A stretch of 64,000 bases of DNA from Octopus bimaculoides (Eukaryota), in NCBI RefSeq assembly GCF_001194135.2, contig NC_068982.1, forward strand, positions 64,864,794-64,928,793. Direction: 5' to 3'. The notes beneath the pieces are model-generated. The model was given only the letters and a program-made list of their open reading frames with translations, did not search any database and had not been told where the DNA came from. A program made the translations under genes and the position numbers. This document shows, piece after piece, positions 327-62,649 of this stretch; position 1 is the stretch's first letter, and the number at the start of each line of letters is the position of its first letter.

Positions 327-329
327 ACA

Positions 330-385
<56 letters not shown>

Positions 386-450: not shown

Positions 451-501
<51 letters not shown>

Positions 502-507
502 GTATAT
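327..507. repeat. (TA)n microsatellites
   Basis: Two direct (TA)n runs at about 327-382 and 445-507. Confidence 0.95.
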
Positions 508-721
508 AGGGAGGCAATCATTAATATACTATATGCGCACATAATCAGAACAAACGTGGATTTAAATAATCGAACATAGAGCTCATTATACACATACGCA
601 CTGACATGTTTGTGAACTCATAAAATATTTTAAAGGAAATGATTAAATTGAAATACAGTTTTAAATTTGGGTGTTGGTTTTATTTCTAGTCATTTATTTG
701 TCCTTCCTCCGCTTATCTGCC

Positions 722-751
722 ATGTCAAGTTTTGACTCGTTTAAACCTGTC
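722..751 (+). CDS. Candidate first coding exon fragment (MSSFDSFKPV), product unknown
   Basis: Acceptor-like ttttatttctAG at 688-689, then gccATG at 722, 10 codons, and a donor-like GTTAGT at 752, inside the CpG-retaining region. No recognisable homology and no confident downstream exon. Confidence 0.2.
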
Positions 752-2696: not shown

Positions 2697-3090
2697 TCTT
2701 TTACTCTTTTACTTGTTTCAGTCATTTGACTGTGGCCATGCCGGAGCACCACCTTTAGTCGAGCAAATCGACCCCAGGACTTATTCTTTGTAAGCCTAGT
2801 ACTTATTATATCGGACTCTTTTGCTGAACCGCTAAGTTACAAGGACGTAAACACACCAGCATCGGTTGTCAAGCAATGCTGGGGGGGACAAACACAGACG
2901 CACAAACACACACACACACACATATATATACATACACATATATACGACAGGCTTCTTTCAGTTTCCATCTACCAAATCCACTCACAAGCTTTGGTTGGCC
3001 CGAGGCTATAGTAGAAGACACGCAGTGGACTGAACCCGGAACCATGTGGTTGATAAGCAAGCTACTTACCACACAGCCACTCCTGCGCCT
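2697..3090 (-). mobile_element. tRNA-derived SINE, family A (young)
   Basis: The reverse complement starts aggcgcaggagtggctgtgtggtaagtagc (A-box-like) then ggttcagtcc (B-box-like), has an internal AT/GT microsatellite and ends in the gactgaaacaagtaaaagag tail. Near-identical to six other copies in the window. Confidence 0.9.
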
Positions 3091-3329
3091 ATGTTTATTA
3101 CAGTTTTTTTTTTTTTTGTGGGAGCAGTGTTGGTGGGATGATCTTTGGCTTCTATTAATCTAGGATATTTGTCTATATAGCTTAATGTTGTAAGCATCAT
3201 GCCATATATAGTTCAGGGGAAATTCTTATAAATGCTTCTAAATTGGATTGCAGTATATCAGTAAACTTTTAAATACTTAATTCTCTGAAGTCTTAACACA
3301 TTAAAAACAAAACTACTCAATATATATCT

Positions 3330-3547
3330 TTTCTACTTTAGGCACAAGGCCCGAAATTTTTGAGGAGGGGGTGCCAGTCGATTAGATCAACCGCAGTATG
3401 CAATTGGTACTTAATTTATCGACCCCCCCAAAAGGATGAAAGCAAAGTTGACCTCGGCAGAATTTAAACTCAGAACGTAAAGACAGATGAAATGCTGCTA
3501 GGCATTTCGCCCGGCATGCTTACGTTTCTGCCAGCTCGCCGCCTTCC
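3330..3547 (-). mobile_element. tRNA-derived SINE, family C
   Basis: Reverse complement ggcggcgagctggcagaaac...ctgagtttaaattc...tttgctttcatcc...gataaattaagtacc matches the family C arrays at 18 kb and 28 kb. Confidence 0.85.
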
Positions 3548-4451
3548 AGTCAATATATGTCAGGCCATGAGTCATGTTGGTTATTGAATCTCTCTCTGCC
3601 ATTCCAGCGATTGATCTAATAAATTGTCATTTAACCAACACCACACATCTCTTTCATAATGGGACTGCTGAAACTACTAGTTTTGATGATTGTAGACAAC
3701 GGGACAAATTTAGGAGAGTATCTAGTCAATTATGTCATTCTCAGTACTTGGGTTTTATGGTTTATTTTATTGACCCGTGGCAGGATGAAAGGCAAAGTCA
3801 ACATGAACAAGGATCAAAGTCAAAATAAGGAGATGTGACTATATTCTAGCATTTTGTCCAATGCTTATCTATCTTTAGAAGACTAAATGATTATATGAGA
3901 TAAAAGTTTGTTTTTTCAACATTTGTCATGTAACTTCCTACAGTAACTATGAGTGAACTCCAGCCCTGACAATAACACAGGAATGGCAACACTTTGTATC
4001 CAATATATTCTTCTCCTCCCTGGCCCAATTCTTATTTCCTTCACTTGTCCCCAAACTTAAATTCACCATTGACTATGATCTCTCCCTTGTTTGCTGTTCT
4101 CTGCATCCTCTGTATTGCTATATTCCTTACCTCTACCCATCTGTCAATCACATCACACTTTTGCAAATGTACCTGATTCTCTGTCCCTATCCCTTCCACC
4201 TGTTCCCCTGTCTCCATTCACCCTTGTGTACCTTGAGGGTCCATCTTGATACCTCATTAATACTATCGTCTTACCTTTTCCAGCTGGGATAGCCATGTAT
4301 CTCCTCTGTGGTGAGACGGTAATTGAAAGAAGCCCATTGAATGTGTGTGTGCATGAGTGGTTATTATTATTTGGTTAGTTTGTTGTTGGATTATACTGGG
4401 ACTGTTAGCTGCATTGACATTGAATTTCTGAATGTTACTGTATTAGATATC

Positions 4452-4506: not shown

Positions 4507-4597
4507 NNNNNNNNNNNNNNNNNNNNNNNNNNNNNNNNNNNNNNNNNNNNNNNNNNNNNNNNNNNNNNNNNNNNNNNNNNNNNNNNNNNNNNNNNNN

Positions 4598-5339: not shown

Positions 5340-7609
5340 TTAAATGATGATGTTGATGATGATATCCCTCTACAGTCTGAATTTGAATCCTGCTTGCTTC
5401 ATATTAACTTTCCATCTCTGCAAGATCAATAAAATTAGTTTCAGTAATGTACTGGAGTTAAGTTCAGAACATTAACCCTATCTCTTATAAATTTATGAGT
5501 GGCCTTATAGCAAAGGGAATAAACATTATTTATATACACTGATTTTACTCTATAATAATACATTTCAGACATCTAAAATAGAGAAAGAAGACTGAAGACT
5601 ACTATATAATACTGCATGTATGTACACATACACACACGATTACAGACTCATAACTGGATATACTCCTGCACATAGTTGCATATACACACTCACATAATGA
5701 TAGATCCCCCACTAGTTCCACCTACAAGCATTCAGTTGTTTGGTAATCTGAACTACCAACTTATTAAATTAACGTACAAGTGGCTGAATATTCCACATAC
5801 ATATGTACCATTCATGTAATTCCTGTACTCAGTTAGTATAACACAATATGTGACAAGGCTAGATCTTTTAATTACAAATACAATCCCAACAGTTTCCATC
5901 CAACCATTTTCACTCATATACTTTGGGTTGACCTGAAGCTATTTCAAAAGACAATTGCTCAACATGCTATACTGCTGGATTGAGCCGGGGACCTTACGAA
6001 TAGGAAATGAACTTGTTTAACTACTCGGCCATGCATATGATTACATAAACATACCTGATTGCAGATACATAAATATTACAAGCTCACACATTTGATTATA
6101 TATGTACACTATTGACATGAGTGTGGCTATATGGTTAAAACTTTGCTTCCCAACCACATAGTTTCAGGTTCAGTCCCACTGTGTGGTACTTGGGGAAAAT
6201 GTCTTCTACTATAGTTCCAAGTTGACTAAAACCTTGCGAGTAGATTCTTAACCACACAGCCATCCCTCTCATTATCTTTACATTCATATTTGCTGACATT
6301 GGTTGAATATGCCTGCAATACAACATCCTGCTCTATATCTAAATCCTGCATTATATTGATGTGTATATGTAAAATATACATGTATACATATATCATAAGA
6401 CATACAGTGTATTTGATTACTTTTGATTATTTTTTTAATTCTATAATATTGAACACAATGTTGATTTACTGAAAAAACACCTATTCATTCTAGTATGCAG
6501 TCATTAAAGCTAAACGCAGGCTATGTAAGAGGGCTATAGTAGCCTGTATTACTGCAAAACTTAAATAAATATAGAAAAACATTGAAGTTTTTTTGTAAAG
6601 ATATTCAGCTGTTTCCCATTATCTCCATGCTTGAAAATGAAATTGTCAGAGAGTATTGGATTAAATACTTTGTAGAATGATGCTTGGTGCCCCATGCATC
6701 TGAGTTCAAATTCTACTTAGCAGGGTTCACTCTACAATCAGTAATTAATTGAGTTGTAAAATTTAGACATAAATAAATAATACCCCCCCCCCCCCAAGGA
6801 AATGTTAAAGATGGGATGGGCACATTTGGAACACTTTGGATTATTCTCTGCTGACCTGGGGCTAAATAGTAACAACTTTGATATACTGCAGAGATGACAT
6901 TTATAACATAGAGCAATTGTCTTTTATGACTGTGCTTTAGTTAATTATTAAAATTAATTTTATATTGGAATTGGTGAATAATAGTGTCATTGATTGCAGG
7001 TTTCCAATGGCCTTATCACTGTATTTTTGACAGGGAAGGTGACAAGGAACTATCTATAAACTGAGGCAGAACAAATATCATATGAGACTTTGCTCAAAAA
7101 GCACCAGTTTTTCTGTTTTACTTGCTAATGTTAACATACATTTATGACAAGATATACATATATACTTATATGTGTTTATTGTTATTGCTTTAAGGTATTC
7201 TTTTCCATGTTTGTATGGGTCAGACAGAATTCATTGAGGCAGATTTTTCTATGGCAGGATGCTCTACCTCACCTGTTTCCAAATATAATATTCCCCCATC
7301 ATCAGCCATCATCATTATCATTTAATGTCTGTTTTCCATACTGGCATGGGTTAAATGGTTTGACAGGGTCTGGCAACCCAGAAAACTGCATCATGCTTCA
7401 CCGTCTATTTTGGCATGCTTTTTACAGCTGGATGCCCTTTCTAATGTCAACCACCTTACAAAGTTGACTGAGTGCTTTTTATGTGGCACCAACACAGGCG
7501 AGGTCTGTTTCAGCATGGTTTTTATGGCTGCACAGAAGACTGGAAATATGAAGGAGTCTGCTTGTATGACAGTGATTCTCATTTATAACTATCTGATCAT
7601 GCAGTGAAA

Positions 7610-8089
7610 TCGAACCTGAAACTAAACTTCTTGTCTACACTGATACACTCCTTGGAGAGAAGGCGGGAGAGGTATGCAGTAATATACATCTGGAATATCC
7701 TGGAAGGAATTGTGCCAAATTTTGGCATTGAAAGCTACACCAATGCCAGAACGGGACGACACTGCACAGTGTCAAAGATCCCAGCAACACCATCGCACTT
7801 CAGGATCAGTTACTGCAACAGCTTGGGTTTCAGGGGCACACAGCTTTTTAATATTCTCCCAAAGGGCATGAGGAACCTGCACAAAGATGTAGGCGTTTTT
7901 AAATCAAAGCTGGACCTCTTCCTGTCGAGAGTCCCAGATGAACCTACCTCACGGCAAGAAGTGCAAATGAGGGTAGCTACATCAAACTCCATTCTTCACC
8001 AAGTGGCACATATTGGAGGAGGATCTCAGTAATAAAAGTGTAGCAAAACGATGGTGCATCAGCATGGCAGCAGCTCTGAGCTGAGACTG

Positions 8090-8138: not shown

Positions 8139-9604
8139 GTTTTTGTATGTGGCAGATGTTCAGGTGCAATAAACACTGAAAATGTGCAGAAAACAACTTC
8201 TGCCACATTCCAGGGAGAAAAACTGGGCGTAGTTGACAGCTTCCGATATCTGGGTGACCAAGTTAGTAGTGGGGGAGGGTGCACTGAAAGAATAAGAATA
8301 AGAATAGCCTGCTAGAATAAGAATAGCCTGCTAGAATAAGAATAGCCTGCTAGAATAAGAATAGCCTGGGCAAAGTTCAGAGAGCTCTTACCTCTGCTGG
8401 CAACAAAGGGCGTCTCTCTCAGAGTAAAAGGCAGACTGTATGACGCATGTGTCTGAACAGCTATGCTACATGTCAGTGAAACATGGGCTGTGACTGCTGA
8501 GGACATGCGTAAGCTCGCAAGGAATGAAGCCAGTATACTCCAATGAATGAGTAATGTCAGTGTGCATACCCGACAGAGTGTAATTATCTTGAGAGAAAAG
8601 TTGAACCTAAGAAGCATCAGTTGTGGTGTGCAAAAGAGACGACTGCGCTGGTATGGGCATGTGGCGAGAATGGATGAGGATAGCTGTGTGAAAAAATTCC
8701 ACACCCTAGCAGTTGAGGGAACCCATGGAAAAGGCAGGCCCGGGAAGACCTGGGATGAGGTGGTGAAGCATGACCTCCGAACATTAGGCCTCACCGAGGC
8801 AATGACTTCTGACTGAGACCTTTGGAAATATGCTGTGCGTGAGAAGACCTGGCAAGCCAAGTGAGACCAAAATCCAAGGCCTTTGCCAGGGATGTAGCCA
8901 GCCCACTTACGCATAACATTCCTTCATTGGACACTAAACTCCGCTTGCGAAGACCTGTTGAGGCAAGTGAAATCGAAATTGAATTAAATTTGTAGACTGG
9001 CACCCATGCCAACGTCTCTTCATTGAACACTAAACTCGGCTTGCGAAGACCTGTTGGGGTAAGCGAAAGTGAAATCGTGATGGCACCTGTACCAATAGAT
9101 CACTAAGAGCACCGTCCGAGCATGATCGTTGCCAGAGTACCAGCTGTCTGGCTTCCATGCCGGTGGCACGTAAATAGCACCATTTGAGCGTGATCGTTAC
9201 CAACGTCGCCTTCCTGGCACTTGTGCCAGTGGCACGTGAAAAGACATTCGAGTGAGTTCGNNNNNNNNNNTCCTGGCACTTGTGCCAGTGGCACGTGAAA
9301 AGACATTCGAGTGAGTTCGTTGCCAGTAGCGCTGGACTGGCTCCTGTGCAGGTGGCACATAAAATACACCATTTTGAGCGTGGTCGTTGCCACTAACAGC
9401 TGACTGGCATTTGTGCCGGTGGCACGTAAAAGCACCTGCTACACTCTTGCAGTGGTTGGCGTTAAGAAGGGCATCCAGCTGTAGAAACTCTGCCAAATCA
9501 GATTGGAGCCTGGTGTAGCCATCTGGTTCACCAGTCCTCAGTCAAATCGTCCAACCCATGCTAGCATGGAAAGCGGACGTTAAACGATGATGATGATGAT
9601 GACG
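8139..9604 (+). mobile_element. 5'-truncated RTE-clade LINE: inactivated RT C-terminus plus about 740 bp repeat-rich 3' UTR and (GAT)n tail
   Basis: Translation FVCGRC...VDSFRYLGDQ...RIAWAKFRELLPLL...LRWYGHVARMDED...GRPGKTWDEVVKHDL...REKTWQAK* (stop at 8862-8864). Premature TGAs, a 19-bp tandem expansion at about 8291-8368, and a gatgatgat tail at about 9588-9604. Confidence 0.9.
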
Positions 9605-22151: not shown

Positions 22152-22597
22152 TCGTCATCATCATCATCGTTTAACGTCCGCTTTCGATGCTAGCATGGGT
22201 TGGACGATTTGACTGAGGACTGGTGGAGCACGAAGGCTACACCAGGCTCCAATCTGATTTGGCAGTTTCTACAGCTGGATGCCCTTCCTAACGCCAACCA
22301 CTCCGAGAGTGTAGTAGGTGCTTTTACGTGTCACCCGCACAAAGGCCAGTCAGGCGATATTGGCAACGGCCACGCTCAAGATGGTGTATTTTATGTGCCA
22401 CCCGCACAAGAGCCAGTCCAGGGGCACTGGCAATGATCTCGCTCGAAAGTCCTTACACATGCTGCGGGCACAAGTGCCAGAAAGGCGACGCTGGGCACAG
22501 GTGCCATCCCGATTTCGCTTTCGCTTGCCCCAATAAGTCTTTGCAAGCTGAGTTTCATGTCCAATGATGGAGATGACGTTGGCATGGGTGCCAGTCA
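22152..22597 (-). mobile_element. 3' UTR-only copy of the RTE LINE
   Basis: tcatcatcatcgtttaacgtccgctttc... is the reverse complement of the 8139 element's 3' end. Confidence 0.85.
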
Positions 22598-23229: not shown

Positions 23230-23760
<531 letters not shown>

Positions 23761-31133: not shown

Positions 31134-31462
<329 letters not shown>

Positions 31463-31929: not shown

Positions 31930-32830
31930 ATGCAACCGGTTTGTAATGAATACACTATAGAATTCCAACCTGTTTCTTTTCTATATATTGAACATGACCA
32001 TTTCCATGATAATAGCAGGACCCTGGCTGTTCTACTTTCAAATACTTTAGTCTTTGCTAAGTTTACTTTGATGCTTCTTGAATCTAGGTTTTGTTCCTAC
32101 ATCTGGAATGTCTTTTCTAATTCTACATACTCAGCTACAAGAATTATGTCAGTATATACGAGTTTCATGGGTAGCAAGTCTTAAACTTTTCTGTTTTTGC
32201 TTGGAGGACTATAATAAATGGTTGGGGACTGAAGAACCAAGCCCTGATGCACTTCTACCTTCATGCTAATTTCATCACTATACTCATTACTAACTTTCAC
32301 CTTGCTGATTGAGCCTCTGTACATGGCTTGTACAGCTCTCACAAGCTATTTATTTCCTCCTTGCTTTCTTAATGACTACCAGATCACAGAGTGTGAAATG
32401 TTGTCAAAGGCCTTCTCTAGATTGACAAATACCAGATATAGATTATTCTTGGTTTTGCACTTCTACAATAGTCTCACTTGAAAGACAGCAATAATAGCAC
32501 TTCTTTTTGGCATAAAACCAAAATTGTGTCTCATCTTAGTTCATTTTATTCCTAATCAATTGAGATATAACTCTTTCCATAACTTTCACAACTTGATCTA
32601 ATATTTTAACACCTCTGTAGTTTCCTCTTTCTAGCGCATCTCTGACCTTGTAGTAGTTGATGATGATGCTGTTATACCAATTATTGAGTATGACACCCTT
32701 TTGTACTACCTTATTTACTATGTGAATGACTAGTCCATTTCCCACTCTTCCAAGCCTCACTGTGGTAATTCCTGATAGATCAAGTACCTTCTCTGCCTTC
32801 GTGTCCTTAATCATCCTAGCCACCACCAGG
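31930..32830 (-). mobile_element. Decayed RTE reverse transcriptase fragment
   Basis: Minus-strand translation KVRDALERGNYRGVKILDQVVKVMERVI...QFGFMPKRS...LYLVFVNLEKAFD, the RT domain N-terminal motifs, with stops. Confidence 0.85.
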
Positions 32831-34640
32831 TCACCCTGTTTTGGTTATGGACCTTACTAAATCAGACCATTATGTACTATGACTCTTAACAATAGTAAAT
32901 TTAATATAATAAAAGATATTCTCACCTGGTTGAGTAGATAAAAATCCTATTTTCAACACCTTACAATATAATTATACATATTTTTGTTTGGTAGTAAAAG
33001 TTTTTTTTTAAACACACACANNNNNNNNNNNNNNNNNNNNNNNNNNNNNNNNNNNNNNNNNNNNNNNNNNNNNNNNNNNNNNNNNNNNNNNNNNNNNNNN
33101 NNNNNNNNNNNNNNNNNNNNNNNNTGTGTGTATACATACATACATACATATATACACACACACATATTCTGTAATTGAAAATTTAGTTTATCTTACTAAA
33201 AATAGCTGCCTTGTTATCAGTCTAAATTTGCCATGAATAAAACTTTAACAATGGTCTTCTTGTTGGAAGAAAAGAGCATTTCCTGGTTACAAACCCTTTT
33301 ATCAGTTTAATAATGTCTTTTATACAGTCTGCATGAGGATGTATACAATCATAGCTGAAGGAACACGAGATGTGCCATCTGAGTAACTTTAAAAATAAAT
33401 ATTTTTTTTTTTTACCTTCTTATTTACAACATCAATATGATATCAACAAACAGATACAACTTTTTGTCTTTTTCCTGTTTTTGAAATCTAATATAAAATT
33501 AGAAGTAAACCCTCCCCCATTTTATCTATTTTAAAGAGTAATGTCACTGAAACCTTCAGGCATAAAAGGGTTTTGAATTTTATTCTTACTCATATATGTC
33601 TCATCAGAAGTATTATCATTGTTAAAATAGAAGATTGGCTATCAGTAAAGATCCAGTAAAATACCTTACTATAATATTAATTGCCTTTCTGTGCATTTTG
33701 TGTTCGCTTCCTGTCAGGGTTATCTTTGCTTTTCTTGTTTCCTGGTTCATTAAAATAAGTAAATACTTATCAAATACTAAGGTAGATTAATTGCCTGTTT
33801 TTAGCACTCCCTTCGCCCTCTTGAATCTATGGCCTTCTATCTGTATGAGGAATTTTAATTATTAACGTTGGTATTTACATTATAAGAAATTTAAAATTTT
33901 GAGATAAAGTATTTTTTTTTTATGGTGGTACTCAAAGTGGATAAGGCTATAAATAATAGTATATAGAATATTAGGTTAAAAAAAACTGGTACCTTTGACT
34001 TTTTTTTCCATCCAAAGGTTTTATTTTAAACCCAATATTTTACATTCTGTTATTTATAGCTTTATTGAGTTCTGCTGTAAAAAATTAATTTATTATGTAT
34101 TTTTTTTTTCTGGAGATGTCATTAGGTCTGACCTCTCGCCTCACTGCTTTTATCATCTTCTTTTTATATTTTGACTCTACACAACTTTTGTGACTTAGTT
34201 GTTGCTGTTTAACCCTGGTGAACCCTGATCATCCAGACCTATGATCAAAAGCATTCCAACTATGGCAATCACATCTTTTTGTATATCTGTGTAATACTGT
34301 GTAATGTCTCTTTCTTCATTTTGTTTGCAAGTAATTAGGGTTGGTGAGAGAGAAAGAGAGATTTTGTTGTAATTTCTAGCAGGTCCAGCAACTACATAGA
34401 GACTCTCTCTCTCGCTCATTGCTTCTGTTTTAATGCATTTGGAAGTTTATGTACAAATATGGCTTCTAAAAATGTTTGGTTAATATACCTACCAAAACCT
34501 ACTGTAAATGGGTACAAGCATGGCTGTGTGGTTAAGAAGCTCACTTTGAAGCCATATGTGTCTGGGTTCATGAGCAAGTGTCTTTTTTTGTATCCTATCT
34601 GTGACCAATACTTTGTGGGGTGAATTTAGCAGATGGATAT

Positions 34641-39163: not shown

Positions 39164-39214
39164 TTCTTTAAAAACCATACAGAAGCATACGTATAAAAAC
39201 ACATACTCAGACAC

Positions 39215-39545
39215 ATCAGCACAGATACTCGTACAGAAATTTACACACCTGCATAATTTCTTTTCCTCAACAGGCCCTGCCCTGTTTAATATTGTCCCGA
39301 AACAGATAAAAGAGGAAAAGGACCCCATCAGCTTTAAACGGAGTCTAGACAGCTTTCTTCAGGGAATACCAGACAAGCCACCCATACCTGGATACAACTC
39401 ACTCAATAAGAACTCACTACTTGAATGGACCATAGACCAAACTTGACTGTAAAAAAGATTTAGATAATCCTATCAGGTGGTGCTATTAAGTTAGACATGG
39501 CCTGGACCAATCTTTGGTCGAAACAAATCTAAGTTTTATCTAAGT
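39215..39545 (+). mobile_element. CR1-type LINE 3' fragment
   Basis: Translation HNFFSSTGPALFNIVPKQIKEEKDPISFKRSLDSFLQGIPDKP...NSLLEW. 3' UTR hairpin gacca-atctt-tggtc and a tctaagtt repeat tail. Confidence 0.8.
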
Positions 39546-41841: not shown

Positions 41842-44214
41842 ATATCTAGGAGTACATTGTCCAGTGTGTGTGTCCCTCACCTTACATTCTGAGGTCAGCT
41901 TTGTTTTTTATCCCTTTGAGATCGATAAAATAAAGTTTCAGCCAACTGCTGAGAGTTAATGTAATCAACTTGTCCCCTCCTCTTAAATTACTGTCCTTGT
42001 GCCCTATGATGGACTGGTGTCTTGTTCAGGGAGGATGTTGTGATCTTAGTTACTTACATGCTATGGAAACAAGTTAATTGGCTTTGTAAGTCCTAGGGCA
42101 CAAGAAAATTTTTTAAAAGGTAAAATGTGTGATTTGAGGGAAATTTGGTTATTTCTAACAGTTCGAGCAACAGCATAGAGGCCGCTATTATTAAATGTAT
42201 TTGGTGTAACTGTTATAGAGTTGAGCTTGTTCAAGGGATATGGATGATAAAGCTGTAAATTAATTGGTGCTAATTACTGTTTCTTATATGTCTGTCTATG
42301 AGCAGAGTTGTGAAATCCTCTAACCTCACTTATCTAATAGCAAAATATAAATATATAGGAAAAATTAAGGGTCACAAGTCTACTCTGTAATAGTTCCCAG
42401 TGTTGAGATTGAACTTGCTAATTCACTGCTTATACTTAATACATCATTTACCTCATTCTTTTGGAATGTCTATTTAGCATTCAATGTATGATACTTCCTT
42501 CTTTCTCTCTGAAGCCCTAATGACTCATAATGTTTCTGTAAAATAGATAGATAAATTTCCATTAAAACCTGTTCTTGAGGAGTGGTAGACAAATCCATTG
42601 TCCAATTTAACTAACAGCTGGGCCTTGATAAACCACTTGCAAGCTTTTTGGCCCTGGTAAATTCCTCCCTTCCTCCCTACTAGTCTTGGAGACCTTGAAA
42701 AGTGTCGTTCCTTTTTTGAATAAGTAATAATGGAAAAAGAAAAACTATCTGTTAGTTGGTCTCTGTCTGTAGCTGCCTGCTGCATGCCCCCACCATCTCT
42801 CTCTCTGTTACAAGCTACCTTAATAAATTGACTGATATCTAATTAAGTATAGTTAAATACTCTCTCAAATAACCTCATGCATTGCCCAGAAGTAGTAGAC
42901 AATATTTCAGGATGTCAATCTGGAATAACATTACTTCCTGTTTCAGAAAGCATTTTTGTTTTATTTTTCGAGTTTTCTTAAAAGCCATGGTTTTTTTTTT
43001 TTTTTTTTTGATGCAGCATATGTTTGACAGTCATTAGTATCAAAGTGCAGGAGCATTACTTTTAGGTAGAATTTATTTTTAAAACTATAAAGAAATGTGG
43101 AATTAGAAGTTGTGGCATTTATGTTTTTTCTTTCTTTTTCATTTTATAAACCAATCTAGCTGGAAAAAAAAAAGTGGCTACAACTGGGAATTGAAGCCTG
43201 ATTACAAGCTTAGTTTATTGGAAGCTTCTTAGTGTTATACAAGCCAATGACATTCCCTGTGTGTGTGTGTGTGCGTGTGCGTGTGTGTGTGTGTGTGTGT
43301 ATCATCATTTGACATACATGTTCCATGCTGGTATGGGTTGGACAATTTAACTGGATCTGATGGGTCAGACGACTGTACCATGCTCCAGTGTCCACTTTGG
43401 TGTGGTTTCTATAGCTGGTTGCCATTCCTAATGCCAACAATTTTACAGTGTGTACTGGGTGTTTCATTCATGCCACCAGCACTGTTGAGATTGCCATGCA
43501 GCTTGCAAGACTATGACACTTGAAGGTACAGCTTTATGGGGAGTAAAAATATGAAACAAGGAACCAGAACATAATGAGTTTCTTGTAGAGGAGCTGCATG
43601 ACTATTTACATTTACACACACACACATACGCGGATACACACAATTGGGACTATCATAAAAGTGTCAAATAAAATGTCTTACAGAGGCCCTTAAAATACTA
43701 TTGTGGATCCCCAATTTACTATTTTGTTGTGTGGACTCCTAAAAATTTTATATAAGCCCTTAGGGGCTAAATGAACCCTGGTTGAGAATCACTGCTCTAG
43801 CCTTTCCAACTCAGGCATCCCCACTCCTCAACTCTTCCCAATCTTTACAGATGTTGCCTACCTACCTTCCTTTCTCCTACTTCCCCTATCTCTTCCTCCA
43901 TATTCTCTTGCAGACCTCCACTCACTACTACTATTCCTATCTGAGATGCCACCTGGTCACCTCATCAGCACTATTTATCTCTTTGGAGATACCATCAGTT
44001 CATTCTCACTCTCTCTTCTACATGTGAGGAGCCATGTAGCTCCTCTACAACAAGAACCTGCTCTACCCCAACCTCTTCCCTCGTACTTTAACCCCTATCT
44101 AACATAAGAACATAACACCCCCCACATCCTCAGGTTTATAGACTTGTGAGCTACATGGTAACCTCAGTAGAGCTACATGGTAACCTCAGTAGAGCTGGTA
44201 GCATGAAAAAAGCA

Positions 44215-46215: not shown

Positions 46216-48449
46216 ATGGTAGGGTAAAATTTGAAGGGAATTTTGGCTTCTAGAAATAACATGTTGAGGAACTGGAGAATAACAGGACCAAGATGGTTAG
46301 CAATAAATATGCTGCATGTCAGACATGTCTAACAAAGATCAACATGGAAAAAATAATGAGTTTAATACAATGATGATGATTATGATGTTTATGATGATAT
46401 TTCAAGACACTTCCTCTTGAATAGTATGAGATGAAAAATAGTTATTTGCTTGGACAGTAAGTCAACATTGAAAACAAATTTTATAAATTGTTTCACTGGG
46501 TGGGAAATTTTAGCAAACTTGGACTTTTAATCTAGACGCTACTAATTTTGGTGGAAGTTAGCATAGAACTAGTAGTGGTTAAGCAATAAGGAGACTAAAT
46601 TGACAAATTGTGTGTGTGTGTGTGTGAAATTACATTAAGAAAGCTATTTCTATTAAATTTCAAAAATAAGAATATAAATCTCTTCCTTCTACAATCATTA
46701 TTTAAAATATTTCTTTTTTGATAAAATGAAATTTTAAACATATTTCTTATTTATAGAATTGTCAACTTTTAATGTTTAAACTAACCTTGTGTGTGTGTGT
46801 GTGTGTGTATGTTACAAGTTACCAAACCTGTTTAGCTCGTTTCTCTTACTGTGATAAGATCAATGATTTCAAGGAATAAAATGAAAAAATCTCTACATAT
46901 TTGTAATACAGTGTTTAAATATGTTTGTCTAAGTAAATAGCATGGTAGTAAAATATCTTGTGGTTTTCTGCAGTGTATCCTATATATTAAAAGGCATTAT
47001 TGCAATACTGCTTTATATACTGTTGCAATATCCTTATATACATGTGTGTGTGTATTTGTTGATGCTTAACAAGATGACTGATGTGATGAAAATGAAATTG
47101 GTGATAATTGATCTGACAGTGATGAGGTTTATGTGAGGAACATGAATAGGCCATACATCCAGTATCATAGCATTTAACCCTTTAGCATTTAAACTGGCCA
47201 TATCAGGCCAAAATATTCTACCCATTTTACGTTCAAACTGGCTAGACTTGTCCTCTCACCCCCCCTCCCCAACCTCACAACCAATCCCCATCTCAACACA
47301 AACCGGAGCTTACTTAATTATATCAAACTTCCCACTTACAACCCTCTATCAGCTATAGTAAAGAATCTGCTTTGGAAAAAGTGGAGGGTAACAGCCATAT
47401 ATTGAAATGCAACAGTTTTCAGAATTTTGTCTCAGTTGTGGACTATACATAGGGTTGTTATCTCCACCAACAGTTGCCTTCACCATTGTGAGTTCACATA
47501 GTTCCCTCTGGAGGAGGGGCAGTTACAGTAACACTCCTCCACCTCATTCACCAACAGCACACCGGGCCCACTCTGGTACCCCACCCAACATGGTGACCTC
47601 ACCACTACAAAGATCTGGTCACCATCCAGCATCTGTTTCTCCTCAACAAGCCATCATGGGCCTGTCGTTTATGCCAATATTCTTTGGTTTTCACCATGTT
47701 GCACAGCCTCTTCTACAACCTGTATTGGACCAGGACAGTGATGAATGATATGGCAACCTACACCTATATATATACATATCATCATCATCACTATTGAACA
47801 TCAGTTTTCCCTACTGGTATGGGTTGGATGATTTGAGAAGATCCAGTCAGCTACAGGACAGTACTGAATTCTGGGGTTTGCTTTGGCATGGTTTCTATGG
47901 CTGAATGCCCTTCCTAATGTGACACATGTACACACACACACATATAGCCAACTATTAAGAGGCATGATTCTATGGAATTGTCACATAAAATCTCTTCATA
48001 GGCTTGCTATGTTAAAAACCAATATATATATATATATCAGAGTGTGATGAACATTATCACTGCAGTGACTCACAACAATAACAGTTGCAGAACAAGTAGA
48101 AAGATATATTTTTTTCAACATGGAAATGCTGAACAGTATATATAAAGGATAAAATCCTTTTAAGAGCAGAAAAATTTGCCGGCAACCAGCCATTTTGCCT
48201 TTGTTGAAGCCTGACAAGTGTTTGCTAACTGCTTAAATGAAATTCAAGCCTCATTTCATAGGAAACAGAATAAAATATTCATCAGAATTATAGAAGCTTG
48301 TTGGGTTGTAAAAAAATTTGGTATACACAAATGTAATAGTATTAAATTAAAAGCATTATCTATGTATCATATTAAATATCTGTGCACTGTTAGAAGGCAT
48401 AATGCTGTGGATGATGTTGATCTTGCTTTGATGTATATTGTGTGACTGG

Positions 48450-48742
48450 TAGCAGCCAGTTAGTGTCATCAGTCAAAGTATTTAGATTGGAATCTGATAA
48501 GAGAGATCTAGTTTTGTAGTCAGTTCAGTGTTACCTCTCTTTCCAGTGTTTTATGCTGATGAGAAGAAAATTACTTCAAAATGTATACATCCATCAATCT
48601 GGATAGAAGGCTCTCCGAACTGCACTGGTGTGTTTAGACCTTTTTGTCAACAGTGTGAATTTTTCTCCATGACAAAATGTAGTGAATGACCTTCTTACAG
48701 ATTTGAATATGTCTCAAACATATTTGAATAGATTGGTAACAA
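48450..48742 (+). mobile_element. Diverged second copy of the hammerhead-bearing unit
   Basis: Colinear with 58640-58925: ttagtgtcatcagtca / taagagaga / hammerhead / catgacaaaa..agtgaatg / aatatgtctc..catatttgaa / tggtaacaa. Confidence 0.7.
48550..48597 (+). ncRNA. Type I hammerhead ribozyme relic (core G12 to A, probably inactive)
   Basis: tttatg-CTGATGA-gaag[aaaatta]cttc-AAAA-tgtataca-TC-catcaa. Stems I (5 of 6 pairs), II (4 bp) and palindromic III form. GAAA has become AAAA at a former CpG. Confidence 0.65.
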
Positions 48743-48975
48743 GTTCATAGGAAAGAATCGCAAGATGGATTCTTCAAACCAAGCCAACCAGTAGAAGACT
48801 TGTGGGTGGGCCAAGAATGAGATGGCTGAATATGCATTGTCTCAGTTGGTTGCTCTTGGGAATCCAGCTGGAAAATCTAATGAGGGTTGCTTCTGATAGG
48901 GCCTTATGGAGCAGATGCTTGAAGACTCTACCATCACGAGATTCCTCAGGAATAATGGGTAAAGATGGATGAACC
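48742..48975 (+). mobile_element. RTE-clade (Rex3/Expander-like) LINE 3' end
   Basis: Translation resembles ILQTKPTSRRLVGGPRMRWLN...LGIQLENLMRVASDRALWSRCLKTLPSR, with a gatggatgaa tail. Confidence 0.7.
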
Positions 48976-53432: not shown

Positions 53433-53938
53433 AATGCTGTGCGTGAGAAGACCTGGCAAGCCAAGTGAAATCGAAATCGAACTAAATTCAACAATGGGCA
53501 CCCATGCCAACGTCTTCTCCTTCATTGGACACTAAACTCGGCTTGCGAAGACCTGTTGGGGCAAGCAAAAGCGAAATCGTGATGGCACCTGTGCCCAGCA
53601 TCGCCTTCCTGACACTTGTGCTGGTGGCACGTGTAAAGACATTCGAACGAGATCGTTGGCAGTGCCGCTAGACTGGCTCATGTGCAGGTGGCACGTAAGA
53701 TACACCATTTTGAGCGTGGCCGTTGCCAGTACCGCCTGACTGGCCTTCGTGCCGGTGGCACGTAAAAACACCCACTACACTCTCGGAGTGGTTGGCGTTA
53801 GGAAGGGCATCCAGCTGTAGAAACTCTGCCAAATCAGATTGGAGCCTGGTGTAGCCATCTGGTTCACCAGTCCTCAGTCAAATCGTCCAACCCATGCTAG
53901 CATGGAAAGCGGACGTTAAACGATGATGATGGTGATGA
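53433..53938 (+). mobile_element. 5'-truncated RTE LINE (last codons plus 3' UTR)
   Basis: Starts atgctgtgcgtgagaagacctggcaagccaagtga, identical to the ORF end at 8830-8864. Has one copy of the roughly 95-bp UTR repeat instead of two. Confidence 0.88.
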
Positions 53939-54300: not shown

Positions 54301-54379
54301 CTCTGCTGTCATCTTTTCCAAATGTTTCTTGAGGATCTACTTGAAAATAGGAATTATAATGTTTATCATATAGTAAGAG

Positions 54380-55050
54380 ACTAACGATGATAATGTTGAT
54401 GATAGAGCAAGAGACTCATTGATAATGTTAATCATGTAGTCTAGATGGGCAGTGATAAGTTGATAGTATAGTTGTGACTGACAATGATAATGTAGGTATA
54501 GTTGTGTCTGATAGAGTTGAGAGTGATATTGATAATGTTGCTGATATAGCTGAAATGGATTGATAATGATGATGAAACATTGAAAATGTTGATAATATAG
54601 ATGTGACTGACATTAATAATGTAATGTTAGGACTGATATTGATAGTACAGTTCAGATTGACATTGATAGTGTTGATGAGATAGATGATACTGACATCGAT
54701 AATGTTGATAATGTTGGTAATATAGTTGAGATAGGCATTGATAATATTGATATGGTCAGAACTGTTATGGAGGATGTTGATAATGTAGATGAGCCTGACA
54801 GTGGTGATGTTGATTGTATGGTTAGAGCTGACATTGATAATATTGATGATACAGTTGAGACATTGATAATGTTGATTATATAATGAAATTGACATGGATA
54901 ATGTTGATATAAATGAAGCTGGTATTGGTAGTATTGATAATATAGATGACGTTGTTATTGATAATACTGACAATATGATGAGACTAACATTAATAATGCT
55001 GATAATATAAATGGCACTAATGTTGATAATGTAGATGATCCAGTTGAAGT
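54380..55050. repeat. Degenerate GAT/AAT-rich tandem repeat (gataatgtt-like)
   Basis: Recurring gataatgttgat motifs with frame slips. Confidence 0.7.
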
Positions 55051-55599
55051 CAAGGATGTGCCACCTGGGTAGAAAAACTAGGCTAAAACTAAACAGATAC
55101 AACTCCTAAATTTAGAAACCTCATTACTGATGTCGAAGTATCACTACTTGTGTCAAAGTAGGCACCCATGTGTTTCCAGAAGTTCACATACAAGTGATAA
55201 TTTATTTTTTTACCTACTTTTTTAACATACTTTTAAAAATGTTTTAGTTTTTAAAATAAATTTGAATTTGCTACCACAACCACAACCTTATATAACAAAA
55301 CAAACTCACTGAGTTATCATAGCATCTACACTCCTTCATCAACCAACCAACCAACCAATGAAGACTCTGATTCTTTAAGCGATGAGTATACATAACTTCT
55401 CTACCCATTAACCTTTTCACAAAGCTCTGGTGATATAAGTAAATCATTTTGCTCCTTATTGTTGCCTCGAAGTGCTCATACTTGAGAGTGAGACAAATCA
55501 TATACTTATAGCTTACCAGCTTTATATGAAGTTTATAGTTTTACATTTCATTTTCTTGGTCTGGAGGAAGTGGCAGAGTACATGGCCTTTGCAAGGCCT

Positions 55600-58380: not shown

Positions 58381-58537
58381 AGTAAAATAAAATAAAGTAC
58401 CAGACAAGTACTGGGACTGATTTAATTGACTTGTGCATTTGTTAGAAATAAATATTAATTATACAGTGCATCTATTGGTTAAAGTAGTAAATTACTCCCA
58501 TAATCTGTTACCTGTTTACAGGTATTAGAGGGTGGGT

Positions 58538-58951
58538 ATGGCTTTCTTACAGGTTCAAATATGTCTCGAGCATATTTGAACTGGTGATAACCTTGTATTT
58601 ATGCACATCACCGCTTAGCGCCGCTACCCTGAAATTTGTTTGCAGTGAGCTGCTGATTAGCGCTACCAGTCACTGTATGATGACAGGAATATTGTAAGAG
58701 AGACAATGTCTCTTATCAGCTCGCAGTGCATCCTGACTGGTTTCTATGACTGAAGAGGAAATAACTGCTCCGAAATGCTTGCATCTCACAGTCTGGGTAG
58801 GTGGCGCTGTGAGCTGATTTTTGTGTATTTACATCATTTGTCTACAACGAGACATGACAAAACACAGTGAATGGCTTTCATACAGGTTCAAATATACCCC
58901 AAGCATATTTGAACTGGTAACAACATTGTATTTATACACATCACTGCTTAG
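58538..58951 (+). mobile_element. Retrozyme-like / Penelope-pLTR-like element: 333-bp unit plus 81-bp terminal redundancy
   Basis: 58538-58618 repeats at 58871-58951 (period 333). Contains several hairpins and a hammerhead ribozyme. No convincing coding capacity. Confidence 0.75.
58744..58791 (+). ncRNA. Minimal type I hammerhead ribozyme, catalytic core intact; predicted cleavage after C58785
   Basis: ctatga-CTGAAGA-gga[aataactgc]tcc-GAAA-tgc[tt]gca-TC-tcacag. All core positions match the hammerhead consensus, and stems I (5 of 6 pairs), II and III form. Confidence 0.85.
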
Positions 58952-59811
58952 AGATAGGTATGTCCCCTGCATCTGTCTTCAGTTGAGTGATCCTAATCTT
59001 GCAGGCTCATAAGTGCTAGTGTCACATAAAAAGTACCTCTGCTGGTACCATGTAAAAAGCACCTGTGTCGGTGTCACATAAAAACACCCATGCTGGTGCT
59101 GGTGCAAAAGCACCCAGTACATTCTGTGAAGTGGTTGGCATTAGGAAGGGCATCCAGCTGTAGAAACCATGCCAAAACAGACATAGAGCCTGGGTAGCTC
59201 CTGAGCTGGTCAGCTTCTGTTAAACCATCCAACCCATGCCAGCATGGAAAACGGATGTTAGATGATGATGTTGATGATCATGCTATATACACATGTACAC
59301 ATACATGCAACAGGCTTTCTCACAGTTTCTGTTTACTAAACTAACTCACAAGGTATTGACTGTTGGTTTACCTGGGTCTATAGTAGAAGATACTTGCCCA
59401 AGGTACTGCGCAATGGAACACTCTAAAAACCATGTGGTTGTAAAGTGAGCATCTTAATCACTCAACCCTATTACCTGTAACTATGTTGTACCTAATTTTA
59501 TTATTTTTTTTAATTACGTTGAAAATTAAAACAAAGGCAACACATTCTTGTTAGAAAAATGGCAACAAAAGGGTTAACATTTAAATGTATAAATAAATGA
59601 ACAATAAGAGGGTTGTGCTTTTAACATTTTTATAACAAAATATATTAAAAAGGTGTCAATTATTTAGTGTGAAATAACATTACTGACAGACTAGTAATAA
59701 ACAATAATTTAGTGACTGAAGTTACTTAGGAAAATGATGCAATTTAAACTAATATAGCTTACTAAATATGTCACTGACCTTTTGATGGACTTCAAAATAT
59801 TTATTAATTAG

Positions 59812-59877: not shown

Positions 59878-62649
59878 GTAAAATGAACAAAAAAGAAAAA
59901 GAACATTGACATATTTGCTACAAGTTTTATATATTTAGAAAAACAAAACATATCTAAAGTTAATGTTCTCAGAGATGCCATCTGCATATAAATTGACAGT
60001 TAAGTGTCAGTGGACATATCATCTCATAAAAAAACAATGTGTTCAGAATTGTCTCTTGCACTTGTTGAAATGATTAAAATGTAAAAGCTTCTAAATTGCT
60101 TGGAACTAATGTTGGCTTTTTGCTCTCTGCATTAATTAGTATTTTTAATTAAAGAAAATGACAAATTAGCTGAATCATTAGTGCTCTGGATAGAATGCTT
60201 TATGGCATTTGTATTGGTTGCCTGTATTTTCTGAATTCAAATGATGGAGAGGCCTCTTTTTGTCTTATGTCTTTTAAGGGTTTATAAATAAAGTAGCATT
60301 TTAGACTGGTAATAATTTTAGAGCGTCAGATGCTTTGAACTTTAAAATAGCAATTTGTTCTGGTTATTTGCTTTCTGAGTTCAAATTCCACTTTCTATCA
60401 CTGGTTTTCTTGTGACAGGAAACTGGTCCTTTATGAACCAGATAACAATGACAGGCCCCCACTTTAGACAGTGGTGCATCAGTTGTAGCAACATGTCAGT
60501 CACAACAATATAACAACCAGACCTGAACAAAACAAGATAAAACTTAAATATTTTATTTAAAAAAAAACCTGTTTTAAGCCAGGAGGCAAGACAGTATCCA
60601 TGATACTTTATAAAATCTCTAAGACTTGTTGGAGGAAAGGGAGAAAAGGATTGTAAAACTAGAGACAGAACTGGCTCTAAAAGCTTGCAACAGAGTGGAC
60701 TTTGCTTAAGGCACCCAAAGTGTCAGATGGTAGCATTAAGTACGCCATGGTAAGATTTGAATTCAGAATGCAAAGAACTAAACAAATACTGTAACGCATC
60801 TTGTACAATGCTCTAACAATTCCATGAATCCACTGATCTGGAGTGGTGTTTTATTATATTATATCCTCAGAGAGGATGAAAAACAAAGTTAACACCAGTG
60901 GGATTTGAGCTCTGAGTGCCAGAACAAAAGTTACAAGATATTATATCTGACTCTCTTTGGCGATTGGTCTGCTGGATGAGAACTGAGCTGGAACTATAGC
61001 AAAGCAACTTATTGAGCACTTATCACTTATGTATATTACGTGTTTATAACTGAGCTACATTGTACCCTTACAGATTTCATGTTTATGACTGAGCCAAATC
61101 TCGCCCTTATAAATTTCATGTTTACAACTGTACCAAATTGCACCCATAAACATGATATGTTTATAACCACCAACCATCCCTCAAAGCAAACCTCATTGTT
61201 TTAAACAAGTATTGATGCATTGATTAATATAGTGCTAGATACCCATAAAAATGGAATGGTCATGGCTGGAATACCTTTGATCACATGTCTGTTGGCCCAG
61301 GGCTGACCTAAAGCAAAATAACATTTAGTCAGCACTTCATATACATTACATGTTTATCATTATCTCTTTTACACATATGAATCAATACCTTTTGAAGTCT
61401 AAAGATGAAGAGAAATAGATATTGTATTGCCGTAGAACATCACACTCCTAGGACTTGTTGCATTAAATATTCATACAACCTACTTAAGGCTGAATCTATC
61501 GTTTTCAATAAGTTTATGTATGTGTGTGTGTCCTTGCATATATGTGTATGTGCGTATACACACATACATACATACATACATACATACATTCATTTATTTG
61601 TTCTTCTAATCTTATTTTTCAAGTTTCTCTCCAAGAGAAAGTGCTAGTTTCCAGTGCAGAAACAAGGGTCTTTAAGTGGAATTTAGATAGATGTGTGTGT
61701 GTGTGCATGCATACATATGTACGTGAAGCTACTTAGCATCTCTTTTGGCATACATTTATTAAAGATCATAGGCACATACAACTCACCTCTTTTTCTTGTT
61801 TCTGGTTTCTTTCTGAATCTTTGACTCAAATTTTCATATAAATCTTAATAATTATAATTTATGTCTAAAGTTTCATTTTGATAAATTTGTTTATGCAGAT
61901 CCTTTTACAAGGATAATTAAGCTTTGTATATATTTACTACTATTGTTAAACCTGTCCTTGCTTTTGGACTTTGTAAACATCAATACTTCTTTTGAAACTT
62001 GGTAAATTTCTTTCTTTTTTTTTTTTTTAAGCCATCCCACTTCGTAATATCTTTCAAAGAATTAATGCCTGACAGATTTTCTTTAACCTTGCAACATCAA
62101 ACCTTCTTAAGCATTGAAAATTCTTTCAAATTTTAAGTCTTACTTTGAATTTGAACTTTAGTTTAGTTCTTGCAGGATTACAGTCACCCTCTTAAAACCA
62201 AGACATCCATTATTATTCAAAATCTTTCCTTCTAACCAATCATGTGCAAATCCTGGAACCTGGGTGCATTCATTTTGGGTTTCCTTGTGAATCTCTTTAT
62301 TTTCAAAGAACATGTTGAACAATGAAATTCAGTTCTGTGTATATTTGTGGCATCAGTAAACCATTGGAGTTTAATTGTTTCATACTTGGGTGCTGGTGCC
62401 ACATAAAAAGCACTGGTAAAAAGCACCCTGTACACTCTGTAAAGTGGTTAGCATCAGGAAGGGCATCCAGCTGTTGAAACCAAACCAAAACAGACTATGG
62501 AACTTGGTGCAGCCCCTGGACTTGCCAGTTCCTGTCAAGCTGTTCAACCCATGCCAGCATGGATGAAAAATAGACATTAAATGATGATGATCCTATTATG
62601 TTCTAAACATTACCGTATTTATTAATTTTAACCAACTCATGCATTGAAA

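What the first reader, a model, noticed from the sequence alone, without database searches (positions are those of the whole stretch)
58538..58951. Intact hammerhead ribozyme inside a 333-bp terminally redundant unit: candidate retrozyme / circular-RNA element
Seen: a complete type I hammerhead (CTGAAGA 58750-56, stem II GGA/TCC, GAAA 58772-75, near-palindromic stem III ATGC-TT-GCAT, TC cleavage site at 58784-85). It is enclosed by a longer helix (tcagctcgcag pairs with ctgtgagctga). The unit has further hairpins (gttcaaatatg/catatttgaac, taagaga/tctctta), and its first 81 bp are repeated exactly 333 bp later. Established: minimal type I hammerheads with a short palindromic stem III, which cleave best as dimers, occur in Penelope-like elements and in non-LTR retrozymes, whose tandem units of a few hundred nt give circular RNAs. 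Inference: 1.25 units is what reverse transcription more than once round a 333-nt circular RNA would leave, so this may be a retrozyme family not yet described in this lineage. Novelty cannot be confirmed without a search.
Basis: partly seen in the sequence, partly recalled or inferred. Interest (0 to 1): 0.85.

Follow-up and report, generated by a model that had tools for sequence, protein, structure and literature searches.

The report
Decayed hammerhead retrozyme copy in octopus DNA
The hammerhead self-cleaving RNA motif is real and belongs to a small non-coding mobile repeat in an octopus-type genome, but this is an old, partly decayed copy of a kind of element already known from many animals, including mussels.

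Summary
It has CTGAAGA, GGA/TCC, GAAA and ATGC-TT-GCAT, and cleavage would follow C58785. A simple descriptor finds it once in 128 kb of sequence, against 0.01 hits expected from shuffles.

A second, 72%-identical copy at 48446-48744 keeps every helix. Eight base pairs there are changed on both sides with pairing kept; slid controls give 0-1. That copy carries an inactivating G12-to-A change.

So this is a genuine type I hammerhead inside a 333-nt, 43% GC, non-coding, strongly self-paired unit. In architecture it matches metazoan non-LTR retrozymes (Cervera & de la Pena 2020).

- The 81-nt terminal repeat is 88% identical, not exact.
- Helix II is weakened to 3 bp.
- No Rfam hammerhead model matches, even at E<=10.
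- The locus holds one ribozyme only, so it cannot release a unit-length RNA.
- The 1.25-unit layout fits copying round a circle, but equally Penelope-type internal initiation on a linear multimer.

The host is an octopod. No Penelope ORF lies in the window, and I could not search an octopus genome.

Verdict: a real feature and a new member of a known kind, of modest interest.

The parts
58538..58951 (+). Copy A of the element: 1.24 units of a 333-nt repeat (one full unit plus an 81-nt terminal redundancy), non-coding.
   Evidence: Direct repeat D2 at offset 333, 88% identity. No ORF longer than 63 aa. Unit GC is 43%. The circular fold is -97 kcal/mol, z = -3.2.
58538..58618 (+). Terminal repeat, first arm (contains hairpin H1 at 58553-58581).
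58871..58951 (+). Terminal repeat, second arm (hairpin H1 at 58886-58914, then an AC-rich tract up to the 3' end of the insertion).
   Evidence: 10 differences from the first arm, 8 of them transitions.
58716..58817 (+). Hammerhead domain: a 14-bp outer helix (58716-29 with 58804-17), a distal helix I (CUGG 58737-40 with CUGG 58793-96), and the three-way junction.
   Evidence: (107-nt fold z = -3.46). RNAalifold recovers the outer helix, both parts of helix I and helix II without any constraint.
58744..58791 (+). Type I hammerhead core. Helix I is 58744-49 with 58786-91 (5 pairs + a C.A mismatch). CUGAAGA is 58750-56. Helix II is 58757-59 with 58769-71. GAAA is 58772-75. Helix III is 58775-84. 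The predicted cleavage is after C58785.
   Evidence: Descriptor hit. Covariation with copy B. Same layout as the published coral and mussel retrozyme ribozymes.
58695..58715 (+). Small hairpin (taagaga / tctctta) next to the outer helix.
   Evidence: kept in copy B through G-U changes only.
48446..48744 (+). Copy B: a diverged, truncated copy of the same unit (72% identity to 58643-58925). Its 3' end abuts an RTE-like LINE tail.
   Evidence: nhmmer E = 1.7e-20, blastn, alignment, identity.
48550..48597 (+). Hammerhead remnant of copy B: CUGAUGA 48556-62, helix II GAAG/CUUC, AAAA 48578-81 (G12 changed to A at 48578), helix III AUGU-AU-ACAU (a perfect 10-nt palindrome), C17 = 48591.
   Evidence: (the only hit when AAAA is allowed).

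Best explanation
Copy A is an old, fixed insertion of a small non-autonomous retroelement whose 333-nt unit carries a type I hammerhead ribozyme. It is a retrozyme-type element, probably mobilised by Penelope-like reverse transcriptases, in an octopod genome.

How the family would work; these steps are inferred from published retrozymes, not shown here. Tandem units are transcribed. [quoted passage not shown] A host RtcB-type ligase closes the 333-nt monomer into a rod-like circle. A Penelope-type RT then copies the circle, or an uncleaved multimer, into cDNA longer than one unit, and that cDNA integrates.

What is shown here:
- The ribozyme core and its helices exist and were kept by selection in the lineage leading to two copies.
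- The unit is non-coding and strongly self-paired.
- Both copies run uninterrupted across the cleavage site, so the template was a ligated circle or an uncleaved multimer, not a cleaved linear monomer.

This particular locus has one ribozyme, a weakened helix II and 12% divergence between its repeat arms. It is most likely a dead relic that could at most cut a read-through transcript once.
For: - The motif is unique in the window and has about a 1% chance expectation. The same descriptor recovers validated coral and mussel ribozymes.
- Copy B aligns over ~290 nt. Of 29 modelled pairs, 89.7% are paired in both copies. Eight show changes on both sides (4 in helix I, 1 in helix II, 1 in helix III, 2 in the outer helix), against 0-1 in slid controls.
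- An unconstrained RNAalifold run recovers the same helices, with 13 compensatory pairs over the whole unit.
- Hairpin H1 is kept in all three copies.
- The unit is 333 nt and 43% GC, has no ORF and folds as a circle with z = -3.2. These values fit the published definition of metazoan non-LTR retrozymes: 150-450 bp units, GC <45-50%, stable self-paired circles (PMC7229834, PMC7761336).
- Helix III (4 bp + 2-nt loop, palindromic) has the same layout as the coral retrozyme ribozyme.
- The host is an octopod. Octopus genomes carry many Penelope-like elements (PMC13282606).
Against: - No Rfam hammerhead model matches either copy, even at E<=10 on 116-nt slices.
- Only 1.24 units and one ribozyme are present. 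No tandem array was seen, and there are only two copies in 64 kb.
- The hammerhead fold is 6 kcal/mol less stable than an alternative fold of the same domain.
- Helix II has only 3 bp in copy A, and copy B has lost G12.
- Family copy number, tandem arrays, circular RNA and self-cleavage could not be checked. No octopus genome was searchable, and all collection scans were negative.
Confidence: 0.65

Rival explanations
1. The unit is simply the pseudo-LTR (terminal non-coding region) of an autonomous Penelope-like element. Copy A would be a heavily 5'-truncated partial tandem of such an element, not a separate retrozyme family.
For: - Penelope-like insertions are typically 5'-truncated and arranged as partial tandems, with hammerheads in their pseudo-LTRs (PMC8557442; PMC4209133).
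- Xenopus retrozymes are sister to Penelope pseudo-LTRs (bioRxiv 10.64898/2026.07.22.740005).
- Octopus genomes hold many Penelope families.
- The 3' ends of copies A and B lie 26 nt apart, just after hairpin H1 in an AC-rich stretch. This recalls the 30-40-bp optional 'tail' and the two internal RT start sites of a Penelope element (PMC11167929).
Against: - The two repeat arms are separated by exactly one non-coding unit, with no ORF between them.
- No RT or GIY-YIG motif occurs anywhere in the window.
- The ribozyme has the canonical layout (helix II 3-4 bp, a real helix III). It does not have the Penelope minimal layout (helix II 6-8 bp, an extra base between A9 and G10.1, no helix III) described in PMC4209133.
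Confidence: 0.2
2. This rival concerns the origin of the 1.25-unit layout only. The layout arose by internal initiation of reverse transcription on a linear, uncleaved multimeric transcript followed by 5' truncation, or by later deletion from a longer array. It did not arise by running more than once round a circular RNA.
For: - In vitro, unprocessed RNA is the dominant template of a Penelope RT, hammerhead mutants do not affect insertion, and RT starts internally in a stem-loop downstream of the ribozyme (PMC11167929).
- Here the insertion ends 101-166 nt downstream of the cleavage site, just past hairpin H1.
- The two arms differ by 12%. That fits either great age or a template with non-identical neighbouring units.
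Against: - The published retrozyme model explicitly predicts cDNAs longer than one unit from circular templates (PMC7761336).
- Nothing in the sequence distinguishes the two routes.
Confidence: 0.45
3. The element is a SINE-like or satellite-derived repeat moved by a LINE (RTE) machinery, and the hammerhead-like fold has no role in its propagation.
For: The 3' end of copy B directly abuts a 5'-truncated RTE-like LINE tail at 48763-48972. The window is full of SINE and LINE debris.
Against: - Copy A has no LINE tail, poly-A or simple-repeat tail.
- The compensatory changes show that the ribozyme helices themselves were under selection.
- The LINE next to copy B is most simply a nested or adjacent insertion.
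Confidence: 0.05
4. It is a chance match: an ordinary repeat that happens to contain the short hammerhead consensus.
For: No Rfam hammerhead model matches. Helices I and II are short. The active fold is not the minimum-energy fold.
Against: The expected number of chance hits is 0.01 per window. A 72%-identical copy keeps all helices through 8 double changes, while slid controls give 0-1. The outer helix and H1 are conserved as well.
Confidence: 0.02
5. It is an endogenised cDNA of an exogenous viroid-like or delta-like circular RNA, not a genomic retrotransposon.
For: Small size, rod-like fold, a hammerhead, and more than unit length.
Against: - Two copies in 64 kb differ by 28%, which implies long residence and repeated insertion in the germ line.
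- There is no ribozyme of the opposite polarity and no ORF.
- No match was found in viral contigs.
Confidence: 0.03

Closest known systems
Metazoan non-LTR retrozymes (Cervera & de la Pena, NAR 2020, PMC7229834), e.g. the Mytilus galloprovincialis 350-390-nt and Acropora millepora 220-240-nt units
   Same: - A type I hammerhead in a few-hundred-nt, low-GC, non-coding unit.
- The ribozyme sits at the tip of a long helix in a highly self-paired predicted circle.
- Helix III is palindromic (coral ACAG-UA-CUGU; here AUGC-UU-GCAU and AUGU-AU-ACAU).
- The G10.1-C11.1 and A15.1-U16.1 pairs are kept.
- Monomer-like dispersed copies are known besides arrays.
   Different: - No sequence similarity outside the core.
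- Helix I (3+2 bp with a mismatch) and helix II (3-4 bp, 7-9-nt loop) are weaker than the 6 bp and 4 bp of the coral and mussel ribozymes.
- No tandem array is seen here.
- Neither copy is recognised by the Rfam models.
- No expression or cleavage data exist.
[quoted passage not shown] 2024, PMC11167929)
   Same: - Type I topology.
- Partial-tandem, 5'-truncated insertion architecture.
- Insertion ends fall shortly downstream of the ribozyme near a stem-loop in AC-rich sequence.
- The host genome is rich in Penelope elements.
   Different: - No RT/GIY-YIG ORF is attached.
- Helix II is short rather than 6-8 bp, and there is no bulged base after A9.
- A true helix III is present.
Newt and salamander satellite 2 / axolotl retrozymes (330 and 350-nt units)
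   Same: Nearly the same unit length (331-353 nt), a type I hammerhead, and a palindromic helix III that allows a dimeric active form.
   Different: - The vertebrate units have a higher GC content (51-58%).
- Their helix III is only 1-2 bp, so they need dimers. Here helix III can form 3 bp plus a CUUG tetraloop on its own.
- The vertebrate units form arrays of up to ~10^5 copies.

Membership tests
Hammerhead ribozyme, type I | Conserved core C3-U4-G5-A6-N7-G8-A9, G12-A13-A14 and cleavage-site U16.1-H17 | tested here: met
   Copy A has CUGAAGA, GAAA and UC at 58750-58785. Copy B fails at G12 (A at 48578), so it counts as a dead copy.
Hammerhead ribozyme, type I | Three helices around the core, with G10.1-C11.1 and A15.1-U16.1, helices II and III closed by loops and helix I open | tested here: met
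   Helices I, II and III are 5(+1 mismatch), 3 and 4 bp in copy A, and 5(+1), 4 and 4 bp in copy B.
Hammerhead ribozyme, type I | Helices supported by covariation among relatives | tested here: met
   8 of 29 pairs are changed on both sides between the two copies, against 0-1 in slid controls and 9/500 shuffles. RNAalifold agrees. The comparison rests on only two sequences.
Hammerhead ribozyme, type I | Match to the curated Rfam hammerhead covariance models | tested here: not met
   No hit at gathering score, nor at E<=10 on 901-nt and 116-nt slices of either copy.
Hammerhead ribozyme, type I | Loop 1 / loop 2 tertiary contacts typical of canonical metazoan type I motifs | not tested
   An internal loop (UUU / U) in helix I and a 7-9-nt loop 2 exist, but no model of the contacts was applied. 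Mussel retrozyme ribozymes also lack the archetypal contacts.
Hammerhead ribozyme, type I | Site-specific self-cleavage | not testable with these tools
   This needs in vitro transcription. The active fold is predicted to be 6 kcal/mol above the minimum-energy fold.
Metazoan non-LTR retrozyme | Unit of about 150-450 bp, GC below ~45-50%, non-coding, no LTR/PBS/PPT | tested here: met
   333 bp, 43% GC, longest ORF 63 aa.
Metazoan non-LTR retrozyme | Tandem arrangement with at least two ribozymes, so that a unit-length RNA can be excised | tested here: not met
   This locus holds 1.24 units and one ribozyme. Whether arrays exist elsewhere in the genome could not be tested. Monomeric derivatives are described for known families.
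Metazoan non-LTR retrozyme | Multiple dispersed copies in the genome | tested here: inconclusive
   There are two independent copies 10 kb apart in 64 kb and none in 20 kb of Octopus vulgaris DNA. No genome-wide search was possible.
Metazoan non-LTR retrozyme | Stable, highly self-paired predicted circular RNA | tested here: met
   Circular fold of -97 kcal/mol, z = -3.2.
Metazoan non-LTR retrozyme | Expressed as linear and circular RNA of unit length | not testable with these tools
   No transcriptome data were available.
Penelope-like element pseudo-LTR | Flanks an ORF with a telomerase-like RT and a GIY-YIG endonuclease | tested here: not met
   No such ORF or motif occurs in the window. 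This was a motif and ORF scan only, not a profile search. Elsewhere in the genome it is untested.
Penelope-like element pseudo-LTR | Minimal hammerhead: long helix II (6-8 bp), unpaired base between A9 and G10.1, helix III absent or 1-2 bp | tested here: not met
   Helix II is 3-4 bp, there is no bulge, and helix III is 4 bp. The criteria come from PMC4209133.
Penelope-like element pseudo-LTR | Partial tandem, 5' truncation and an optional 30-40-bp tail | tested here: inconclusive
   Copy A is a partial tandem. The 3' ends of copies A and B differ by 26 nt. With n = 2, and with copy B's end possibly created by the neighbouring LINE, this is not decisive.

The most novel reading that the evidence does not exclude
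Octopods may carry a still-active retrozyme family, invisible to the Rfam models, that yields abundant ~333-nt circular RNAs. Its conserved H1 hairpin plus the following AC-rich tract would be the internal start site used by Penelope reverse transcriptases. That would give a sequence-level link between retrozyme circles and the Penelope initiation mechanism in a lineage noted for heavy RNA processing.
Probability: 0.2. Interest if true: 0.55.

Novelty: new member of a known kind. Interest (0 to 1): 0.3.

Why it matters
If the family proves abundant or active, it would extend ribozyme-bearing circular-RNA retroelements to cephalopods. It would also supply a hammerhead variant that current Rfam models miss, which is useful for repeat and ncRNA annotation of octopus genomes, where about two thirds of the DNA is repeats. 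Finally, its insertion ends could test whether Penelope-type internal initiation also mobilises retrozymes. As it stands, this locus is a relic and changes no concept.

Tried and rejected
- Rfam scans of the whole window and of short slices gave no hammerhead hit. The only weak hits were spurious (IS009, miRNA-like hits on the outer helix).
- The metagenome scan with the H1 hairpin pattern returned two AT-rich chance matches unrelated to the unit.
- The viral and prokaryote-genome scans returned nothing.
- Protein-space searches with ORFs of the unit and of a LINE RT fragment returned nothing.
- The exhaustive representative search gave two hits. They are translated 56-bp satellites with no DNA similarity and no ribozyme core.
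- Look-ups of window ORFs to find the source record found nothing on record.
- I fetched 20 kb of Octopus vulgaris DNA and a 1.6-kb contig. They share the window's SINE/LINE repeats but hold no copy of the unit.
- A covariance model built from the two copies, run with filters off, found no third copy in the window.
- Segmental duplication of copies A and B is rejected, because the flanks share only dispersed SINEs.
- A tRNA-like or pol III B-box reading of GGTTCAAAT is rejected, because it is not conserved in copy B.
- A 6-bp AGGTAT flanking repeat is noted as a possible target-site duplication, but it is not flush with the element and is not significant.

Full report

- CTGAAGA is at 58750-56.
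- Helix II is GGA/TCC, at 58757-59 and 58769-71.
- GAAA is at 58772-75.
- Helix III is A-TGC-TT-GCA-T at 58775-84, with C17 at 58785.
- The enclosing helix is 58716-26 with 58807-17. It in fact runs to 14 bp, 58716-29 with 58804-17.
- The two hairpins are also present.

The 81-nt direct repeat lies at an offset of exactly 333 nt, but it is 88% identical and not an exact copy. It has ten differences, eight of them transitions and several at CpG sites.

I wrote a hammerhead descriptor requiring the core, G/C-type helix II of >=3 bp, helix III of >=3 bp with A15.1-U16.1, H17, and helix I of >=3 bp.
- It hits the window once on both strands, at this site.
- It gives 0.01 hits per shuffled window.
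- It recovers the experimentally active coral and mussel retrozyme ribozymes taken from the supplement of PMC7229834.

Against this, no Rfam hammerhead model reports the site. This holds at gathering score and at E<=10 on 901-nt and 116-nt slices.

**2. A second copy gives the decisive evidence.**

BLAST and nhmmer of the unit against the window find one further, diverged copy on the same strand (copy B). It spans 48446-48744 and corresponds to 58643-58925, with E = 1.7e-20 and 72% identity. Its flanks are unrelated to those of copy A apart from dispersed SINEs, so this is not a segmental duplication.

Copy B carries the ribozyme at the homologous place:
- CUGAUGA
- helix II GAAG/CUUC
- AAAA instead of GAAA (G12 changed to A at 48578)
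- helix III AUGU-AU-ACAU
- C17 at 48591

I scored a 29-pair structure: outer helix, distal and proximal helix I, helix II and helix III.
- 89.7% of cells are paired.
- Eight pairs are changed on both sides with pairing kept: four in helix I, one each in helices II and III, and two in the outer helix.
- Sliding the partners by 1-3 columns gives 0-1 such pairs and 25-47% pairing.

RNAalifold, run with no constraint on the whole homologous stretch, independently recovers several elements: the outer helix, both parts of helix I, helix II, hairpin H1 and a further helix (UUUGUC/GACAAA). It reports 13 compensatory pairs.

H1 is kept in all three available copies, with one compensatory and two wobble changes.

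A covariance model built from the two copies finds no third copy in the window with filters off.

The conclusion is that a real type I hammerhead embedded in a conserved RNA architecture was under selection in the lineage that spawned both copies. Copy B is now dead because of G12A. Copy A keeps the core but has lost the fourth helix II pair (A.C where copy B has G-C).

**3. What the element is.**

The unit has these properties:
- It is 333 nt long and 43% GC.
- It has no ORF above 63 aa.
- As a circle it folds to -97 kcal/mol, z = -3.2.
- The ribozyme sits at the tip of a long helix.

These are the published hallmarks of metazoan non-LTR retrozymes: type I hammerheads in 150-450-bp low-GC repeats, expressed as highly self-paired circles. 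They have been shown in a coral, a mussel (350-390-nt units) and the axolotl (330/350 nt) (PMC7229834 and PMC7761336).

Helix III (4 bp closed by 2 nt, palindromic) has the same layout as the coral ribozyme ACAG-UA-CUGU. It can also close as AUG-CUUG-CAU, so obligate dimer action is not implied.

The ribozyme does not fit the Penelope 'minimal' type, which has helix II of 6-8 bp, a bulged base after A9 and no helix III (PMC4209133).

No RT or GIY-YIG remnant is present in the window. There is no sequence similarity to the published retrozymes outside the core.

**4. Host.**

An RTE-type LINE tail in the window matches a predicted protein of Octopus vulgaris at 88% identity. The corresponding O. 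vulgaris locus shares the window's SINE/LINE families at 80-90%. The window is therefore octopod DNA; the species was not determined.

Octopus genomes carry many Penelope-like families, with an expansion at a Jukes-Cantor distance of about 0.2 (PMC13282606).

A rough inference of my own follows.
- The A-to-B distance is 0.35 (0.17 per copy).
- The distance between the two arms of copy A is 0.135 (0.07 per copy).
- On that paper's scale this places the family's activity at tens of millions of years ago, and the copy A insertion later.
- The sample sizes are tiny, so these figures are indicative only.

**5. How the 1.25-unit layout arose.**

Both copies run uninterrupted across the cleavage site. 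The template was therefore a ligated circle or an uncleaved multimer, not a cleaved monomer.

The published retrozyme model predicts cDNA longer than one unit from circles. However, Penelope-like elements generally insert as 5'-truncated partial tandems. For an Anolis Penelope element, the following was shown in vitro (PMC11167929):
- Unprocessed RNA was the dominant template.
- Hammerhead mutants inserted normally.
- RT started at two internal sites in an AC-rich stem-loop downstream of the ribozyme, which explains an optional 30-40-bp tail.

Here the 3' ends of copies A and B lie 26 nt apart. Both sit just past hairpin H1 in an AC-rich tract, 153-166 nt after the cleavage site. This is suggestive, but n = 2 and copy B's end abuts a LINE.

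I cannot decide between the circle and the linear multimer. The 12% divergence of the arms fits either age or non-identical neighbouring units.

**6. This locus today.**

It has one ribozyme, a weakened helix II, and an active fold 6 kcal/mol above an alternative fold that sequesters the core. It cannot release a unit-length RNA and is best read as a relic.

**7. Novelty.**

In the searchable literature I found no description of a retrozyme or hammerhead family in octopods. Type I hammerheads are nonetheless known to be widespread in metazoans, including molluscs. 235 Rfam Hammerhead_1 hits were listed for the giant squid genome (PMC6962438).

This is a new member of a known kind, and its interest is modest. 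The open and checkable points are the family's copy number, the existence of arrays, its relation to Penelope pseudo-LTRs, and circular RNA expression. All of these need an octopus genome and transcriptome, which the tools here did not reach.

Noticed in passing
window 48763-48972 (+): A 5'-truncated RTE-like LINE tail (..GGPRMRWL..DRALWSRC..) begins within ~20 nt of the 3' end of hammerhead copy B. It is either nested or an adjacent insertion.
   Followed up: partly
window 58506-58519 and 58521-58526 / 58956-58961: The palindrome ACCTGT-TT-ACAGGT lies just upstream of copy A and shares TTACAGGT with the element (58547-54). AGGTAT occurs on both sides of copy A, but it is not flush with the element's ends and is not significant as a target-site duplication.
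   Followed up: partly
window 59106-59278 and at least 12 other sites (e.g. 62419-62589, 53764-53938, 9428-9600, 22155-22325): A very abundant ~175-bp SINE-like family, present on both strands at 72-80% identity. A second family at 59284-59400 has about 10 copies.
   Followed up: no
window 8547-8813 (+), 32539-32844 (-), 7589-8029 (+), about 39200-39443 (+): LINE debris: an RTE-like C-terminal tail (88% identical to an O. vulgaris predicted protein), an RT N-terminal fragment, and two CR1-like C-terminal tails (..FKSKLDLFL.., ..FKRSLDSFL..).
   Followed up: partly
window 4507-4597, 9261-9270, 23437-23496, 31184-31278, 33021-33124: Runs of N (assembly gaps), mostly next to long microsatellites (CT, AC, CTAT, ATAG).
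   Followed up: no
window 54340-55105: A 32-42-nt minisatellite (GATAATG-rich) that creates a 224-aa pseudo-ORF on the minus strand.
   Followed up: no
window 8295-8368 and 44148-44196: Perfect short tandem repeats: a 19-nt unit x3.9 and a 22-nt unit x2.2, both 100% identical. They are young duplications in otherwise decayed sequence.
   Followed up: no
L005 (ENA ERZ26222911 contig, 1-4200): An unrelated 56-bp satellite array whose translation matched the unit's ORF spuriously. It is a reminder that tandem repeats inflate phmmer scores.
   Followed up: yes
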